A stretch of DNA of 64,000 bases from Salpingoeca rosetta (Eukaryota; Protista; Choanoflagellata): contig JAWQFM010000005.1 of NCBI GenBank assembly GCA_033442325.1, forward strand, positions 1,861,665 through 1,925,664, given 5' to 3'. Made by a program: the position numbers and the translations under genes. The notes under the pieces were generated by a model. That model ran no database searches, was not told the DNA's origin, and saw only the letters and a program-made list of their open reading frames with translations. This document shows, piece by piece, positions 697 through 56,032 of this stretch. Positions within the stretch are counted from its first letter, which is position 1. Every line of letters starts with the position of its first letter.

Positions 697-2021
697 NNNN
701 NNNNNNNNNNNNNNNNNNNNNNNNNNNNNNNNNNNNNNNNNNNNNNNNNNNNNNNNNNNNNNNNNNNNNNNNNNNNNNNNNNNNNNNNNNNNNNNNNNNN
801 NNNNNNNNNNNNNNNNNNNNNNNNNNNNNNNNNNNNNNNNNNNNNNNNNNNNNNNNNNNNNNNNNNNNNNNNNNNNNNNNNNNNNNNNNNNNNNNNNNNN
901 NNNNNNNNNNNNNNNNNNNNNNNNNNNNNNNNNNNNNNNNNNNNNNNNNNNNNNNNNNNNNNNNNNNNNNNNNNNNNNNNNNNNNNNNNNNNNNNNNNNN
1001 NNNNNNNNNNNNNNNNNNNNNNNNNNNNNNNNNNNNNNNNNNNNNNNNNNNNNNNNNNNNNNNNNNNNNNNNNNNNNNNNNNNNNNNNNNNNNNNNNNNN
1101 NNNNNNNNNNNNNNNNNNNNNNNNNNNNNNNNNNNNNNNNNNNNNNNNNNNNNNNNNNNNNNNNNNNNNNNNNNNNNNNNNNNNNNNNNNNNNNNNNNNN
1201 NNNNNNNNNNNNNNNNNNNNNNNNNNNNNNNNNNNNNNNNNNNNNNNNNNNNNNNNNNNNNNNNNNNNNNNNNNNNNNNNNNNNNNNNNNNNNNNNNNNN
1301 NNNNNNNNNNNNNNNNNNNNNNNNNNNNNNNNNNNNNNNNNNNNNNNNNNNNNNNNNNNNNNNGTGTGGCCTGTCCACCGCGACATGACGTATTGCCCTC
1401 AGTCTGCTCTCCACCCAGCAGCTGGCTTTTGGTTTTTGGGGCTGTGTAGTGCTGTGCTCTGAGGGAGGGGACGTGTGCCTCACTGTGCATAGTATCCTAG
1501 GATTGCGGTTGATGTCAAGTGTGTACATACCTCATTCACACACGCGCGCTTTCCGAGCCCTCGCTTCGTTTGAAGTTTCCACTTTTCATTTCTTTGATTG
1601 CATCGAGTGAATGGGAACGCTCTAAGCTATGCTTGCTCAACCACTAGCAAAGGAAGCGAAATACAAATGACATGACGTACCTTCTATCACACGAAACGAA
1701 TAACGTACAGCAGCAACATAATGTAACACGTAATGTAATGTCATGAAATGTCATGACATGCAATGGAACTGGAACAACACGATGTCAGAACCGCCACGAT
1801 GCAATGCCTTCATGCACTCTTGCACTGCCTCAATTGTTCGCGAGTTGCTAGTTGGCGGGCCATTAGAAGACTAGACATCAATATCAGCGACTCCAGCTCC
1901 CTGTTGCTGGAAGCGCGGGCTCTTTCCGTGCACCGCCTGTAGCTGAAAGTCAATGCCACAGATGCCTTCATGTCAATTTGCAGTTGTGGACCCTGATCAC
2001 AAAGACGACAGGTTCGCTTCC

Positions 2022-10701: not shown

Positions 10702-13700
10702 ATGGCGCGCCCACTTGGCCGGGCACTCGCCCGCAGCCCCCGCCGCCGCCACCCATCACCGGCATGCACCGGGATGCTTGTGACCGCGGGGCTGCTGCTC
10801 GCATCCTTGTTACTCGGAGTGGCGGTGGCGCAGAACACACCGCCCACCTTCCAGGGCACCCCCTTTATTGAACTGTACATCTTCAACGTTCCCGAAACTA
10901 ACGACCCAACATCAACCGTTGGCACCGTCACTGCAACAGACCCCGATGCGGGGCAGACCCTCCAGTACACGCTGTCTGGGAGTGGCTCTGCCGCGTTCAA
11001 AATCGACCGTAACACGGGTGTGGTCACGTCGCGCCTTCCGCTCGACGCAGACTTTGGCACCACCACCTACGACGACATCACCGTGTCTGTCTCAGATGGC
11101 GTGGACTCGACCACGGGCCGCATCCTCATCGCCATCACGGACGTCAACGACAACTCGCCCGTCTTCAACCAGGACCTGTACACGATGAAGGTGGCTGAGG
11201 ATCTCGAGGCGGACGTGACGTTTGCGTCTGTGGAGGCGGTGGACGTCGACGTCTCGACGCAGAACAGCCGCGTGACGTACTTCATCATTGGCGGTGACCC
11301 GGATGGCATCTTCCAGATTGCCACCGTCAGCGGTGAGGGCAGGGTCTCTGTTGCCACGCAGCTTGACTACGAACGCAACAGGACCCACACGCTTGTGATT
11401 GAGGCACGGGATGGTGGGACGCCGACCCGCACAGGCAACACCACCCTCTTCATCGAAGTCACCGACGTCAACGACAACGTGCCAGTGTTCAGCCAGTCGC
11501 TGTACGAGGTCAACCTGCCCGAAACCCTCCGCGAGCGCCCCGCCCGCCGCCGCCGCGCCGTGGGCACTGTTCTGGTGACCATCTCCGCCACGGACGACGA
11601 CACGGGCGACAACGCCGAGGTGCGTTACTCCATCACCGGCGGCAACGAGCTCGGCCTGTTTGCCCTCGACGAGGTCACTGGCGACTTCACCCTGGAGAAG
11701 CCCGTCGACTTTGAGGAGCTCACCAACCCCGTGCTCGACATTACTGTCGTGGCCACGGACCTTGGCGGCGCCGTGTCTGACCCGGCCACCATCCGCGTCA
11801 CCGTGCAGGACCGCGACGACCTCCCCGTCTTTGAGTCGGACCAGCTGCCGGAGCTGACCATCTTCGCCGGCGACATTGGCCCCGTCGGCTTTGCCCCCGT
11901 CGTCGATGATAGCCGCAAGAACACGTTTGAGTGCCGCCTCACCACCCCTGGCACCCCATTCACCGTCGCCGCCGCCACGAGCGGCGCCACCGGCTGCAAC
12001 ATTGTTGCGCAGTCCTCCACCACGGAGCTCGGCGGGCAGATGTTCACCCTCATGCTGGAGATTGCCGACCAAGTCGGCGTGCTGTCGCGCACCCGCGTCG
12101 TCGTCAACGTGCTGCCCACCAACCGCGACCCGCCCGAGTTTGCCATGGACATCTTTGATGTCCTCCTCTCCGTGGCCACGCAGATTGACACCACCGTGGT
12201 GGACCTTGGCGTGACAGACCCCGATGGCGACGCCGTGTCCTGCAAGCTCCTCTCCTCCCCCAAGGGCCTCTTCCGCATCGACGACTGCCAGCTCGTGCTG
12301 GACTCGCGCCTGCCCACGGATGGCCCCACCTTCTTTGACTTGCTTGTGGAGGCGTCGGATGCGCCCACGCGCGGCAACCGCAACCTCACGTCCACGGCCC
12401 ACGTGCAGATTACGCTCACGGGCGTGTGCCCGAGCGACGACGCGTCCTGCACATGCGCGGACGAGGGCGCCACGCCGCCCAACTGCACCCCAGACCTGTG
12501 CGAGGCCTTCCCTTGCGTCAACGATGGCGTGTGCTCGCAGGGCGTGAGCAACCAAGGCCTGCCCGAGCGCAAGTGCATGTGCGCCAACTTCTTTGGTGGT
12601 GACGACTGGCGAGGTGGACGCCGTGCGACGACACGCCCTGCATGACGGNNNNNNNNNNNNNNNNNNNNNNNNNNNNNNNNNNNNNNNNNNNNNNNNNNNN
12701 NNNNNNNNNNNNNNNNNNNNNNNNNNNNNNNNNNNNNNNNNNNNNNNNTCCACGACCACGACAACGACCACAACAACAACAAAAACCACAACCACCACAA
12801 CCACAACCACCACCACCACCACCACCACCACCACCACGCTCAACCCGTGCGATGGTTCGCCCTGCTCTGAGGGCCAGTTTTGCCGCCGCGTCGACGACAC
12901 CAACTTTGAGTGCGTGGACGGGAGCACCACCACAACCACCACCACGACCACCACCACCTTGTCCACGACCACGGCAGCCACGACCACCACCACGACAACG
13001 ACGACGACGACGACCACAACCACGACGACATCGCCGCTGGCCACTGTGACGTTCACGGTTCCCGACGATGACGAGATCAACGACTGCTCCCAGTGCCAGA
13101 ACGGCGGAACGTGTGTGAGGACACCCACTGGCCAGGTGACGTGCGACTGCCCACGCGTGCAGCAGGGCCGCTTCGAGCTGTGCTACGAGAACGCCGACTG
13201 CACCTCGCAGCTCCCCTGTGACCAGGTGCCGTTCCCTCGTGGCGATGCCACGGGCTCCAGCACGTCCACGCCTGCCACCCGCCCTGAGGTGCCGTACACG
13301 GTTCCGGACAGCGACGTCATCGACGACTGCTCGCAGTGCGAGAACGGCGGGACGTGCGTTGTGACGTCGTCCGGCCCAGCTGACGTGCGAGTGCCCGCGC
13401 GTGCGCCAGGGCGGTGTTGAGCGCTGCTACGAGGATGCCCGCTGCACCAACCTGAGCCCCTGCGACGAGGTTCCTTTCCCCCGCGGCGACGCCTCTGTCT
13501 CCACCACCGCTGCTGCCACCGTCACCTTTACCGTGCCAGACCAGTTTACTGTCTCGGACTGCACTCTGTGCCAGAACGGCGGCGTGTGCGCGTTCACTGC
13601 CAGCGGCCAGCAGTTCTGCCAGTGCCCCCGCGTGCCGATTGGGTCAACCGACTTTTGCTACGAGAACTTTGACTGCACGTCGCTGCAGCCGTGCGACCAG

Positions 13701-15107: not shown

Positions 15108-27784
<12,677 letters not shown>

Positions 27785-28159
27785 CTGCGCGCCTTGCTGA
27801 AGGAGTTTGTTTGCTTGTTTGGATTTCAGCGAGAGGAGGAGACATGAATGCCAGCGGCCGCAGCGTTGCGCTTTGCTTGTTGCATCTGCAGGCAGCCAGC
27901 CAGGACTGCAGCTTGCTTTTTCCCAAAACAACTCTGCTGTTTGTTTTGCGCACGTTGCCCAAGTCCGAAACTCTACTGAATTCAGTCGAAACTGATATCA
28001 GTGGTGGAGAATCTTGGAGCACAACACAACAACACAACACAACACAACAAGCAAAGCAGCACGCACACGGCTCTTCCACTCTCCAGCCAGCCAGTCAGTG
28101 TTGTCAGATCACATCACGCGATCTGGCAATCACATCACGCCATTACAGGAGCAGGAGCG

Positions 28160-29346
28160 ATGGTTGGTGTGTTTGCGAGCTGGCGAACCCAGCGCTGGAT
28201 TACACTGGCGTTTGGGTGCGTGCTGATGCTGTGTGCAGGTACCGTGTACCTGCTCCCTGCATGGAGTGATGGCTTGCGCGCCCAGGCGCACCTCAGCATC
28301 TCATCCTTCAACACAGTCGCCACCGGCCTCAACGCAGGTGATCGCATGGGCGACTTGTGAGGGGGGATGCTTGAATGCACACATGACTGTGTCTGTATGG
28401 TTACGTGTGTGTGCGCGCGCGTTGGTCTGTGAATGTGTGTGTGTGTGTAAATTTCTCTCACTGTGTATGTGTCTGTGCCTGTGAATGTGTGCGTGTGTCT
28501 GTGTGTATGTGTGTAAAGTTCGTTCACTGTGTCTGTATCTGCCTGTATGTCTGTGCCTCTTCGGTGCTAGCAAGATGCTGTTGTATGGCTGCGATCCACA
28601 GCGATGGCTCTTGCTGTTTCGTTGCTTGTGGCAGCCATCAGTGCTGCCTGAACAAGCATGCACATCATCACCCACGCATGTTCACCCGCCGCTTCCCGAT
28701 CACTCCACACACAACTACACCAATGCAGGGACATGGTTGGGCGTTATTGGTGGTGTCCTGTACGATCACGTTGGCCCAAAGCCCACGGGTATCGCCGCAG
28801 GATTGCTTCTCTTCCTCGGCTATTTTGGCATCAAGCTCGCCGTCCAGGTGTGTGTGTGTGTGTGTGTGTGTCTGTCTGTCTGTCTGTCTGTCTGCGTGTG
28901 TGTGTGTCTGTCTCTCTGTCTCTCTGTCTCTCTGTCTCTCTGTCTCTCTGTCTCTCTGTCTCTCTGTCTGTGTGGTTAACAGACGCAGCCTGTTGCAGCC
29001 CATAGTCGCAGACGTGCTTGCACTCGTGCCACCCCCAACCAAGCCGTCTTGATCGCTGTGCTGGTTGTCGTGTAGCCCTTCCCTGAACAAGCTCACACAC
29101 ACACACACACATACACATACATGCACACGCATACACATACATACACATGCACATACAAACACATCAACCAGCACTATGCCAAGACGTGGCTCATCACCGT
29201 CCTTGCCCTTGTCGTGGGCCAGGGATCAGGGTAAGCTTGACATTGACACTGTGATGAAAGCCCATGACTTGGCCACAAAGTACTTCTGCCACCCCAATAC
29301 ATTGGACTTGCTGGTCACATACACACACACATGCATACACTTTTCG

Positions 29347-29377
<31 letters not shown>

Positions 29378-30223
29378 GTGCACTTTTCGCTCACACACAC
29401 ACACACGTACCGGCTCACATGCACTGACGGCTTCCCCCTCCCTCCCCGCTGGCATGCGGTTCCTTTCGCTGGTATCAGCTTCTTCTACACCGTGGCCTTG
29501 AACACGAGCGTCAAGAACTTTGGACCAAACAGTCGTGGCAAGGTATTGCGCAAGCGACACACCCTGCTACTTGATCCTTGGACTGTTGTACTGGCGTCAT
29601 ATTGGCGGCAAGGCTCTCATGTGACAGCTGCTCACTTCAATGCTGCTCGTGCTCCCCTCTTTTGCACGCCCTCTCTTTCGCTCACTCAGTATCCCCCCGC
29701 ACACACACACACGCACGCACACACACACATACACACATACACACACGCAAACACCCGCACACACGCACACACGCACCCTTTTCTTGCGGTCTGCCTGTCT
29801 ATGTTCGGCAGGTCGTTGGCTTGCTGGTGTGCTTCTTCGGCCTGTGCTCCGGCATCTTCACCGTCTTCCTCAAGGGCTTCTTCCCCAGCGCCAACTCGGG
29901 CCACCTGCCGCAATTCCTCCTCTTCCTTGCGCTGGTCACGTCCTGCACGGGCCTCATCGCAACGTTCTTCCAACGCCTCCTCTTCGTGGCAGACAAGACG
30001 TCCCTCCCGCCATCCATGCACCCGCTCACCCCTGCTGACGCGACGCCGCCACCGGCCGAGCCCCTGCGCATCACCATCGGTACGCACGCACGTGTGTGTG
30101 TGTGTGGGGGGGGGACAAGAATTGTTGTATCTACCTCATTTCTTGCTTGAAGCTTGCTTGCGCCCTCTTGTGTTGAGTTTGGGTGTTGTTTCTCTGCTGA
30201 TTGCCCTCCATTTATCCACATCC

Positions 30224-30309
<86 letters not shown>

Positions 30310-31966
30310 GCACCCCCTCTCTTCCTATCACGAGCCGAAAGTGAAAACAAAATTGAGGAAGCGGATTGTATCTCCTGCAGGCTCACGTTGTCTCTTATGT
30401 TCAGGGCATCTCGGTTTCGGTCTGGGGGCACACCGTTTATCTATCTGAAAGTCCGTTACCAGCCAAATTAGATTAAGGATTGGATAATACAAACCACGTC
30501 GGCGCCGTATGTCCTCCTAGCAGCCACTGAAAGCGTTCTTACGCGCGACGGGGATAAATGATTTACGTGCGGTAACGGCTCTCTAATAAGTACGTGTGCG
30601 TAAGAAAGTCCACGTCGTCGCATTGGCGAGAAGAGTCGCAATACCTGAGTGAACTGAAAAGAACCTAGCCGCAGGGCAGAAAAAGTGGTTGCTTGAGGGT
30701 AACAGTGAAAAACAATTGCGCTTCGGCACTTCTGTCTGGTGTGTGTGTGTGTGTGTGTGTGTCTGTCTGTGTGTGTGTGTGTGTGTGTGTCTTTCTGTGT
30801 GTGTGTGTGTCTGTCTGTGTGTGTGTGTGTGTGTGTGTCTGTACCTGTGTCTGTACCTGTGTCTGTACCTGTGTCTGCGCCTGTGTCTGATCTGGTCTGT
30901 GTGTACTCTTGTGTGCGCGACCATACCCATAATTGCATTATTGGATGCCACGTGCCCCAATCGCGCCCCATCTCATCCCAATCTAATTCTCCCCTCCCCT
31001 GCCCTCCCACACCCCCGCCGTCACATGTCGACACCAGTTTTCCGTGTGCAACACGTTTGGGCGGCTGTTTAGTGGCCACATCTCCGACACCTTCGCCCGT
31101 CGCCTTCCTCGACCGGCATTCCTGGTCATGGCAGCCTTGCTCATGGCCATCGTTCAGGTGAACACCGCATTCCCATCTCAGTCACACTTTTGTCTGTGCT
31201 TTGATGTGCATGTTTATGTGTGTGCAAACATGTTTGTTTCGCTTACCATTCACCACCCCCCTCCACTGCTGTGCTTGCATGCGCGTGCGTGCACCTTTGA
31301 TGTTCCGGCATGCATTCGATCCATTTCGCGGGTTTCAGGTCATCTTTGCGTTCGCCAGCGTCAACCTCCTGTATTTGGGTGCCGTGCTTCTGGGCCTTGC
31401 CTATGGGTCGTTCTTCTGCCTCGTGCCCACCCTCACTGCTGAAGCGTTTGGAGTTGTACATTTTGGCGCCAACTACGGCTTGCAAGGCCTTGCCCCAGCA
31501 GCAGGTGCGTGCATCCATCTGTTCATCTTTCTGCCTAACTGCGCAGGGGTTTGCCCTTGCCTTGGCTGGGTTCTTCCATGCCCATATTTCTCACCAAAGC
31601 TTGCGCTCTCGTCAACAATCCACCAACCACACACACACACACACACACACATCTTTTCTCTTGCTCCTCACCACCACCACCACGCCAACCACTGCGCGTG
31701 CAGGATCTGAGCTGCTGAGCACGTTGATGGCTGGGGGCATGGCCGACGACCGGCAGCGCCACCATTTTGTCAACGTCACCTCCGATCACGGGCACGACCA
31801 CGCCCTGCACTGCCTCGGGCCAGCCTGCTACCGCGTGTCGCTGCTGGTCAATGCAGGCCTGTGTGTGTTTGCTGCGCTGATTGCGGTGGTTATTACAATC
31901 AGGCAGCGCACGGGCCGTGCAGACACGCTTCTTAAGCACTCACACAGCGCAATCAAGCAATCATAG
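28160..31966 (+). CDS. Nodulin-like (NFD4/MCH1-type) MFS transporter; a central exon is absent from the sequence
   Basis: Exons ~28160-28337, 28729-28847, 29172-29230, 29478-29542, 29812-30079, 31038-31157, 31339-31504 and 31705-31966. Motifs AGTVY, GVLYDHVGP, VKNFGPNSRGKVVG, CNTFGRL, FGVVHFGANYG and CLGPACY. Confidence 0.85.
30334..30727 (+). ncRNA. Candidate large structured RNA or foreign insert, family unassigned
   Basis: ~49% GC by hand count, TpA-rich, no microsatellites, no credible ORF. Nested helices with G-U pairs, paired ends and an 8-bp loop-loop complement (30453-30460 with 30571-30578). Confidence 0.55.
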
Positions 31967-32634
31967 ACTGCTGCTGCTGTAGGCAACAACCTCGCGTTTT
32001 GCTTTGATGTAGGCGATCTTTGCTCTTGTTCTTCTTTTCCACGAACGACAACCATCTCTATGCATTCGTTTGCTTGCTTCTTCGCCCGTTGTGTTGTGTT
32101 ACGACCGCATCTCCCATTGCTTGTTCATGTTCTCGCCTGCCCTCTTGTGCTCTTGCTTCTTTCTTTCTTGTGCATATATTGTTGCTGACTTGTGAGCACG
32201 CGCCTCCATCATCCGCGTGCCTCCCCCCCCCCCCCCTCCTTGCTTCCTTCCCCATGCTGTGTGCTGTTGACACTTGACTGGCTGACGTGCATGCTGCCGG
32301 GTTTTACAAAGCATACACAGAAAGATCAAGCAGAACACAAACGTATACGACATCCATGCCAATCAACAGTGTTGAGTGGAAGGGTTGGGGGGGGGGGGCA
32401 CGCATGGGGTTGCTCAGTCATGTGGCGCTTGCTTCCAGGCAAGTTGAGTCAGAAAAAACAAGACATTAACCATCGAAAAACAAACAACATCTCTCACATA
32501 CGCGCACACGTTCAACTCTCGCATGCACAATCACTACACACATATTCATACGCATACACAATCACACACACACAATCACACAAACGCTCACATGCACGTC
32601 CACACACACACACACACACACACGACAACGACGT

Positions 32635-56032
<23,398 letters not shown>

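What the first reader, a model, noticed from the sequence alone, without database searches (positions are those of the whole stretch)
30334..30727. ~400-nt foreign segment that folds into a closed multi-domain RNA with a loop-loop (kissing) pairing
Seen: between two microsatellites lies sequence unlike its surroundings (~49% GC, about 23 TpA, no CA/TG runs, no credible ORF). Hand-found nested helices: ends GCCGAA 30334-39/TTCGGC 30722-27 and AATTG 30351-55/CAATT 30713-17; TTATCTA 30437-43/TGGATAA 30481-87 with inner TCTGA/TTAGA; GTCCTC+AGCAGCCACT 30511-28/AGTGGTTGCT+GAGGGT 30684-700; 12-bp TTCTTACGCGCG 30536-47/TGTGCGTAAGAA 30595-606; hairpin 30622-42. The loop sequence CCGTTACC (30453-60) is the perfect complement of GGTAACGG (30571-78) in another loop. 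Frequent G-U pairs favour the + strand as RNA, and GAAAGTCC occurs twice. Inference: a large ribozyme-like or mobile-element-associated ncRNA that I cannot assign. It could be a horizontally acquired insert or a contaminant or chimeric piece.
Basis: partly seen in the sequence, partly recalled or inferred. Interest (0 to 1): 0.85.

Follow-up and report, generated by a model that had tools for sequence, protein, structure and literature searches.

The report
Foreign read-sized piece: assembly artefact
The "structured RNA" is most likely a stray piece of foreign sequence about 415 bases long that entered the Salpingoeca rosetta reference assembly where a real exon belongs, so it is an assembly error and not a gene.

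Summary
The segment is in the window as described. Its composition stands out: 48.7% GC, and TpA at 5.6% of dinucleotides against 1.7% for the window. Every hand-found pairing exists. The fold is no better than chance: the minimum-free-energy z-score is +0.49 on the + strand and -0.35 on the - strand, the longest helices are matched by 11-28% of shuffles, and Rfam gives no hit.

The organism is Salpingoeca rosetta. In three independent DNA runs, contigs cover every unique block of a 4.2-kb stretch without a mismatch, but none covers 30214-30889. No run out of 20 that hold the neighbouring gene holds words of the segment. It lies in an apparent intron of a Nodulin-like MFS transporter gene. About 150 residues that homologues have (the TM7-TM8 region) are encoded nowhere in the window. 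Fifteen RNA reads join exon 31038 to an upstream exon end that the window lacks.

Window 30322-30674 is 353/353 identical to a 49%-GC island in the 70%-GC Kutzneria sp. 744 draft assembly, where it also cuts off an MFS gene.

Verdict: a foreign piece of about one 454-read length, of unknown source, that stands where real sequence should be. It is not a real feature, and interest is low. The same scan noted many similar "foreign" segments in this genome on other DNA; I did not test those.

The parts
29800..30079 (+). Last exon before the hole of a Nodulin-like MFS transporter gene. The gene starts at the ATG at 28161 and its stop codon ends at 31966.
   Evidence: Pfam Nodulin-like, E = 6.7e-4, on this exon alone. 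tblastn of homologues P0004, P0008, P0011 and P0012. RNA depth 5-7 and DNA contigs with no mismatch.
30214..30889 (.). Interval with no contig from any of three DNA runs and no RNA read. It holds both microsatellites and the whole finding.
   Evidence: read laying: contigs of X1 and X3 end at 30213 (X20 at 30173) and resume at 30890 (X20 at 30988). Depth is 0 in bins 30297-30860 in X1, X3, X20 and X23.
30226..30307 (.). (CA)n microsatellite on the left of the piece.
   Evidence: Sequence.
30322..30674 (.). Core of the foreign piece, identical to Kutzneria sp. 744 supercont1.1 (L001:1337-1689).
   Evidence: blastn gives 353/353 identities and no gaps. The exact 24-mer scan of 185,579 species genomes found only that record.
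30675..30727 (.). 3' continuation of the foreign piece, present only in this window. The same composition continues. The right border lies somewhere in 30728-30739.
   Evidence: Sequence. The Kutzneria record diverges after L001:1689 into its own 70%-GC sequence.
30738..30889 (.). (TG)n/(TGTC)n microsatellite block on the right of the piece.
   Evidence: Sequence. The reads tool skipped it as a repeat.
31038..31152 (+). First exon after the hole (FSVCNTFGRLFSGHISD..., the end of TM8 and the loop motif). In RNA it is joined to an upstream exon end that the window does not contain.
   Evidence: 15 RNA reads have a loose end before 31037 with full agreement. The intron joint 31152->31334 is GT..AG. 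Translating the loose end extends the homology to four homologues. The loose-end sequence is absent from the window at up to 3 mismatches.

Best explanation
The segment does not belong to the Salpingoeca rosetta genome. It is a foreign piece of about 415 nt (window 30322 to about 30736), roughly the length of one 454 Titanium read, that was built into the reference assembly between two intronic microsatellites. It stands where the real sequence should be, and that real sequence includes at least one exon of a Nodulin-like MFS transporter gene. The helices are what any 394-nt sequence of this composition gives by chance. Shown: the segment is absent from independent DNA, no RNA lies on it, the mRNA contains an exon end that the window lacks, and an unrelated draft assembly contains an identical copy. 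Inferred: the route. A contaminating or chimeric read, or a mis-tracked mate, was probably placed during hybrid assembly or manual gap closing at the sequencing centre. The source of the piece remains unknown.
For: (1) read laying: in three DNA runs from three studies (2014, 2018, 2025), Logan contigs cover every unique inter-microsatellite block of 27900-32100 with 0 other letters, including a block of only 106 nt (28978-29083). None covers 30214-30889. (2) look-up of sequencing runs: no run was listed for the segment, although 2 of its 39 sampled words would have been enough. 20 runs from 8 studies hold the neighbouring 36500-40500 at share 1.00. (3) The flanking ORFs are exons of one + strand Nodulin-like/MFS gene. 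RNA joints at 29229->29478 and 31152->31334 show it is spliced. (4) Homologues P0004 (Monosiga brevicollis, 551 aa), P0011 and P0133 have about 150 residues (P0004 219-366, P0133 167-322) between the parts that align to 29809-30042 and to 31038 onward. tblastn finds no counterpart for them anywhere in the 64-kb window, and the six-frame translation of 30080-31060 shows none. (5) 15 RNA reads carry CAGCAACAACGCCGCTACTTTCCTCGTCCT directly before 31037. This string is not in the window. In frame it reads SNNAATFLVL, and it raises the alignment score to all four homologues tested (for example, 128 against 111 for P0004). The genomic sequence upstream of 31038 does not align. (6) Window 30322-30674 is 353/353 identical to Kutzneria sp. 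744 supercont1.1. There it is a 49.5%-GC island in 65-75%-GC DNA, and it ends a YbfB-type MFS_4 gene at profile position 311 of 364. The two records continue differently on opposite sides, so each holds a different sub-window of a longer third sequence. [quoted passage not shown] The Kutzneria sp. 744 draft is poor: 534 contigs and BUSCO 87.3% (PMC10232511). (8) Folding and helix statistics are at chance, and Rfam gives no hit.
Against: The reads tool itself warns that a hole in Logan contigs proves nothing, because a filter drops some records. Contigs also break at microsatellites, so no contig bridges the hole and the true sequence there was not recovered. I could not find the source of the piece. 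It is absent from PLSDB plasmids, INPHARED phages, E. coli genomes, JGI metagenomes and IMG/VR, and GTDB species genomes hold it only in the Kutzneria sp. 744 record. That Kutzneria sp. 744 was sequenced at the same centre rests on the 'supercont' record name and my own memory, not on a tool result. The original Sanger and 454 reads of the assembly were not examined.
Confidence: 0.93

Rival explanations
1. The piece is real S. rosetta DNA (ordinary intron sequence or a decayed transposon fragment) that short-read contigs fail to show for technical reasons.
For: The read-laying tool warns that holes in contigs prove nothing. The piece is flanked by microsatellites at which all contigs break.
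Against: Seven other blocks flanked by microsatellites in the same stretch, down to 106 nt, are covered in X1, and most of them in X3 and X20. The word index found no holder at all, against 20 holders for the neighbouring gene. The gene lacks about 150 residues here, and RNA reads carry an exon end that is absent from the window. The piece is identical to a record from an actinobacterium.
Confidence: 0.03
2. The piece is a genuine recent insertion (a mobile element or horizontally acquired DNA) present only in the culture used for the reference assembly.
For: There is a sharp composition break. The ends carry a 6-nt inverted repeat (GCCGAA/TTCGGC) and an imperfect direct repeat AGTGAAAACAAAATTG / AGTGAAAAACAATTG. 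An identical copy exists in another organism's record.
Against: An insertion would not remove the exon that the mRNA contains. There is no second copy in the 64-kb window. No coding capacity or Pfam hit was found. 100% identity over 353 nt between a choanoflagellate and an actinomycete, with different break points in each, fits a shared laboratory source better than biology. It is absent from 185,578 other species genomes and from metagenomes.
Confidence: 0.03
3. The piece is an intron-encoded structured ncRNA or ribozyme.
For: Several hand-found helices and an 8-nt loop-loop complement exist.
Against: The MFE z-score is +0.49 and -0.35 on the two strands. The helix lengths lie within the shuffle range. 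Rfam gives no hit. No variant homologue is available for covariation. RNA depth is zero on both strands while the flanking exons have depth 5-20. The DNA is absent from independent runs.
Confidence: 0.01

Closest known systems
Cross-project or chimeric contamination in draft genome assemblies. Large-scale screens of GenBank and RefSeq (for example Conterminator and NCBI FCS-GX) have catalogued this class of error; I cite these from memory and did not check them here.
   Same: A short stretch with foreign composition that is identical between records of unrelated organisms, absent from independent reads of the organism, and breaks a gene.
   Different: Usual cases are whole contigs from bacteria, human or vector. 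Here a read-sized piece sits inside a scaffold with no N gap, its source matches nothing in the searchable collections, and it stands in for real sequence rather than being added to it.
Intron-encoded structured RNAs (snoRNAs, group I/II introns, other Rfam families)
   Same: It is located in an apparent intron and has several possible helices.
   Different: No Rfam match, no thermodynamic signal, no expression, and the 'intron' is itself an artefact of a missing exon.
Non-autonomous transposons (MITE or SINE)
   Same: The size is about 400 nt, there are short inverted ends, and the composition is unlike the host's.
   Different: It is single-copy in the window, has no target-site duplication of host sequence, is absent from the host's reads, and replaces an exon.

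Membership tests
Structured non-coding RNA or ribozyme | Folding energy clearly below that of dinucleotide shuffles | tested here: not met
   z = +0.49 (+ strand) and -0.35 (- strand). The longest helices are reached by 11% and 28% of shuffles.
Structured non-coding RNA or ribozyme | Match to a curated RNA family | tested here: not met
   No Rfam 15 hit at gathering score over the whole window. The best E-value in 30200-30900 is 2.9.
Structured non-coding RNA or ribozyme | Compensatory changes in homologues | not testable with these tools
   The only other copy found is 100% identical, so no variation exists to count.
Structured non-coding RNA or ribozyme | Presence as RNA | tested here: not met
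   RNA depth is 0 on 30156-31001 in run X23 (16.5 million reads read), while the flanking exons have depth 5-20. This is one library only, and small non-polyadenylated RNAs could be lost.
Assembly contaminant or chimeric insertion | Absent from independent sequencing of the same organism while the flanks are present | tested here: met
   Three DNA runs from three studies show no contig on 30214-30889, with all neighbouring unique blocks covered at 0 mismatches. No run holds its words, against 20 runs for the neighbouring gene.
Assembly contaminant or chimeric insertion | Identical sequence in the record of an unrelated organism, foreign to both by composition | tested here: met
   353/353 identical to Kutzneria sp. 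744 supercont1.1: 49% GC against about 70% there, and against 52-57% GC in the surrounding kilobases of this window.
Assembly contaminant or chimeric insertion | Real sequence is missing at the site | tested here: met
   About 150 residues of the MFS protein have no counterpart in the window. RNA reads carry the missing exon end. In Kutzneria the MFS_4 gene stops at profile position 311 of 364.
Assembly contaminant or chimeric insertion | Traceable to identifiable source reads or a source organism | not testable with these tools
   The Trace Archive, the original 454 runs, nt and UniVec are not available here. There is no match in plasmids, phages, E. coli, metagenomes or viral contigs.
Transposable element (MITE or SINE) | Multiple copies in the host genome with terminal repeats and a target-site duplication | tested here: not met
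   No second copy in the window and no words of it in any S. rosetta run. Only a 6-nt inverted end is present.

The most novel reading that the evidence does not exclude
The piece is a genuine, very recently transferred mobile sequence shared between a choanoflagellate and an actinomycete, present only in the cultures that were used for the two reference assemblies.
Probability: 0.01. Interest if true: 0.8.

Novelty: not a real feature. Interest (0 to 1): 0.06.

Why it matters
The segment has no biological importance: there is no new RNA here. The result has some practical value. The S. rosetta reference assembly, which is a widely used model genome, has an error that removes part of a transporter gene (the TM7-TM8 region of a Nodulin-like MFS protein). 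The same foreign piece also sits in the RefSeq record of Kutzneria sp. 744. Other first-stage notes on this genome describe many similar 300-740-nt 'foreign' segments, some said to replace exons (not tested here). These should be put through the same read-coverage test before anyone reads them as novel RNAs or mobile elements.

Tried and rejected
1. Rfam at gathering score and at permissive E-values: nothing credible.
2. MFE against shuffles on both strands, and longest-helix statistics: at chance.
3. Other copies within the window by blastn with word size 7: only the microsatellite flank matched.
4. Coding potential: the six-frame translation shows no MFS-like stretch. Pfam on the two longest open frames of the piece gave nothing.
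5. Source of the piece: there is no match in PLSDB plasmids, INPHARED phages or E. coli genomes by distant blastn, none in JGI metagenomes with two different exact words, and none in IMG/VR. Four 20-mers occur in no paper. The food bacterium Algoriphagus is unlikely as the source, because the scan of species genomes hit only Kutzneria.
6. A process spike-in in the Broad 454 library paper: none is mentioned. My idea that the piece is a 454 control fragment or a vector stuffer remains an untested guess.
7. Fetching the public S. rosetta contig through the neighbouring gene's protein (P0033) failed, because the protein exceeds the tool's length limit.
8. P0133, a transcript-derived homologue, proved to come from another species and not from S. 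rosetta. The full S. rosetta protein was therefore not recovered.

Full report
**What is in the sequence**

Window 30334-30727 is a 394-nt non-repetitive stretch. It lies between a (CA)n tract (about 30226-30307) and a (TG)n/(TGTC)n block (about 30738-30889). Its composition differs from the rest of the window. GC is 48.7%, and TpA makes up 5.6% of dinucleotides against 1.7% window-wide (AA 11.2% against 3.8%). It is the most TpA-rich non-repetitive stretch in the 64 kb, and it has no second copy there.

**Is the fold more than chance?**

No.
- On the + strand the minimum free energy is -110.4 kcal/mol against -112.7 ± 4.7 for dinucleotide shuffles (z = +0.49).
- On the - strand z = -0.35.
- The longest Watson-Crick helix (9 bp) is reached by 22 of 200 shuffles, and the longest helix with G-U pairs allowed (12 bp) by 55 of 200.
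- Rfam 15 gives nothing at gathering score for the whole window. In 30200-30900 it gives only chance-level hits, the best with E = 2.9.

**Context**

The window is eukaryotic, with GT..AG introns full of microsatellites. A neighbouring giant ORF is 100% identical to PTSG_01976 of Salpingoeca rosetta.

The ORF pieces around the finding are exons of one + strand gene for a Nodulin-like MFS transporter.
- Pfam finds Nodulin-like on 29800-30078.
- tblastn with full-length homologues maps exons from about 28184 to 31942. I found those homologues with the exon as query; one of them, P0004, is from Monosiga brevicollis (named).
- The start is an ATG at 28161.

The finding therefore sits in what looks like a 958-nt intron between an exon ending at 30079 and an exon starting at 31038.

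**A piece of the gene is missing**

Homologues have about 150 residues between the parts that align to these two exons (P0004 219-366, P0133 167-322). That region includes TM7 and most of TM8. Nothing in the 64-kb window encodes them, and the six frames of 30080-31060 show no such stretch.

**Reads**

The word index listed no run for the 394 nt, although 2 of its 39 sampled words would have been enough. In contrast, 20 runs from 8 studies of the same organism hold the neighbouring 36500-40500 completely.

I laid three DNA runs (2014, 2018, 2025; three studies) and one raw RNA run on 27900-32100.
- DNA contigs cover 28044-28421, 28518-28839, 28978-29083, 29169-29314, 29417-29687, 29779-30213, 30890-31613 and 31694-32100 with no mismatch.
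- No contig lies on 30214-30889 in any run, and RNA depth there is zero.
- RNA joints 29229->29478 and 31152->31334 (GT..AG) confirm the gene's splicing on the + strand.
- Fifteen RNA reads that lie on the exon from 31037 onward carry, directly upstream, CAGCAACAACGCCGCTACTTTCCTCGTCCT, with full agreement.

That string is not in the window at up to 3 mismatches. In frame with the exon it reads SNNAATFLVL. It extends the alignment to four homologues (for example, score 128 against 111 for P0004), whereas the genomic sequence upstream of 31038 does not align. So the mRNA contains an exon that the assembly lacks at this place.

**The same piece in an unrelated record**

An exact 24-mer from the segment was scanned over one genome for each of 185,579 bacterial and archaeal species. 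It hit one record, Kutzneria sp. 744 supercont1.1.
- Window 30322-30674 equals L001:1337-1689 at 353 of 353 positions.
- There the piece is a 49.5%-GC island in 65-75%-GC DNA.
- A YbfB-type MFS_4 gene runs into it and stops at profile position 311 of 364.
- On the 5' side the Kutzneria record continues with about 20 more low-GC bases that the window lacks. On the 3' side the window continues with at least 53 more bases of the same composition that Kutzneria lacks.

Each record thus holds a different sub-window of a longer third sequence.

The piece is absent from JGI metagenome contigs (two words tried), IMG/VR, PLSDB plasmids, INPHARED phages and E. coli genomes. No paper in the library holds any of four 20-mers taken from it.

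**How it probably arose (inference)**

The S. rosetta genome was produced at the Broad Institute from Sanger plasmid and fosmid reads plus 454 Titanium reads of about 400 bases. [quoted passage not shown]

The 'supercont' naming of the Kutzneria record suggests the same centre. That link is my own knowledge, not a tool result. The Kutzneria draft is known to be poor, with 534 contigs and BUSCO 87.3% (PMC10232511).

In both records the piece has about the length of one read (about 415 and 370 nt), and in both it stands where real sequence is missing. The simplest reading is that a contaminating or chimeric read, or a read placed through a wrong mate link, was used to close a gap. I could not establish what the source sequence is. 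A sequencing control fragment, a cloning stuffer, or another project's DNA are untested guesses.

**Alternatives**

- *A technical hole in short-read contigs.* This is unlikely, because much shorter blocks flanked by microsatellites are covered, the word index agrees, and the exon is missing.
- *A real strain-specific insertion or inter-domain transfer.* This does not explain the missing exon or the different break points in the two records.
- *A structured RNA.* This fails every test that could be run.

**Earlier notes of this scan**

Other first readers noted many 300-740-nt 'foreign' segments in this same genome. Several lie inside microsatellite tracts, and two are said to replace exons. 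I did not test them. They fit a systematic assembly problem and should be checked in the same way.

**Verdict**

The observation of a compositionally foreign segment is correct. The structural reading is chance. The segment is an assembly artefact and not a feature of the organism.

Noticed in passing
window 30080-31037 (gene 28161-31966, + strand): The Nodulin-like MFS transporter gene is incomplete in this assembly. About 150 residues (the TM7-TM8 region) that RNA reads and homologues show are not encoded anywhere in the window, so any gene model made on this assembly at this locus would lack that region.
   Followed up: yes
L001:1316-1689 (Kutzneria sp. 744 NZ_KK037166.1): The RefSeq record of this actinomycete carries the same foreign piece as a 49%-GC island. 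It cuts off a YbfB-type MFS_4 gene at profile position 311 of 364, just upstream of the end of a convergent 893-aa gene that looks to me like a pyruvate phosphate dikinase (not tested).
   Followed up: partly
window 28020-28052: A (CACAA)n-like low-complexity tract in the 5' leader of the MFS gene. DNA contigs branch here into several different continuations, contig depth upstream is 10-15 times that of the neighbouring blocks, and 22 RNA reads show a 31-nt 'goes back' joint. This is probably a length difference in the repeat or a dispersed repeat.
   Followed up: no
window 32635-46506, - strand: A 4623-aa open frame belongs to PTSG_01976 (annotated as 6230 aa), with Ephrin_rec_like cysteine repeats and a long coiled-coil tail. 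The frame runs in phase through a TG/CA microsatellite intron near 32900-33100.
   Followed up: partly
window 697-1363, 12649-12748, 24680-24779, 48440-48614: Four N gaps, two of them exactly 100 N, show that this is a draft scaffold. The stretch next to the first gap (about 1400-1700) is also unusually AT- and TpA-rich and could be checked for the same kind of artefact.
   Followed up: no
window 31757: C>T in 4 of 23 RNA reads, with no such difference in the three DNA runs. The reads start at only two positions, so this may be an error or duplicates.
   Followed up: no
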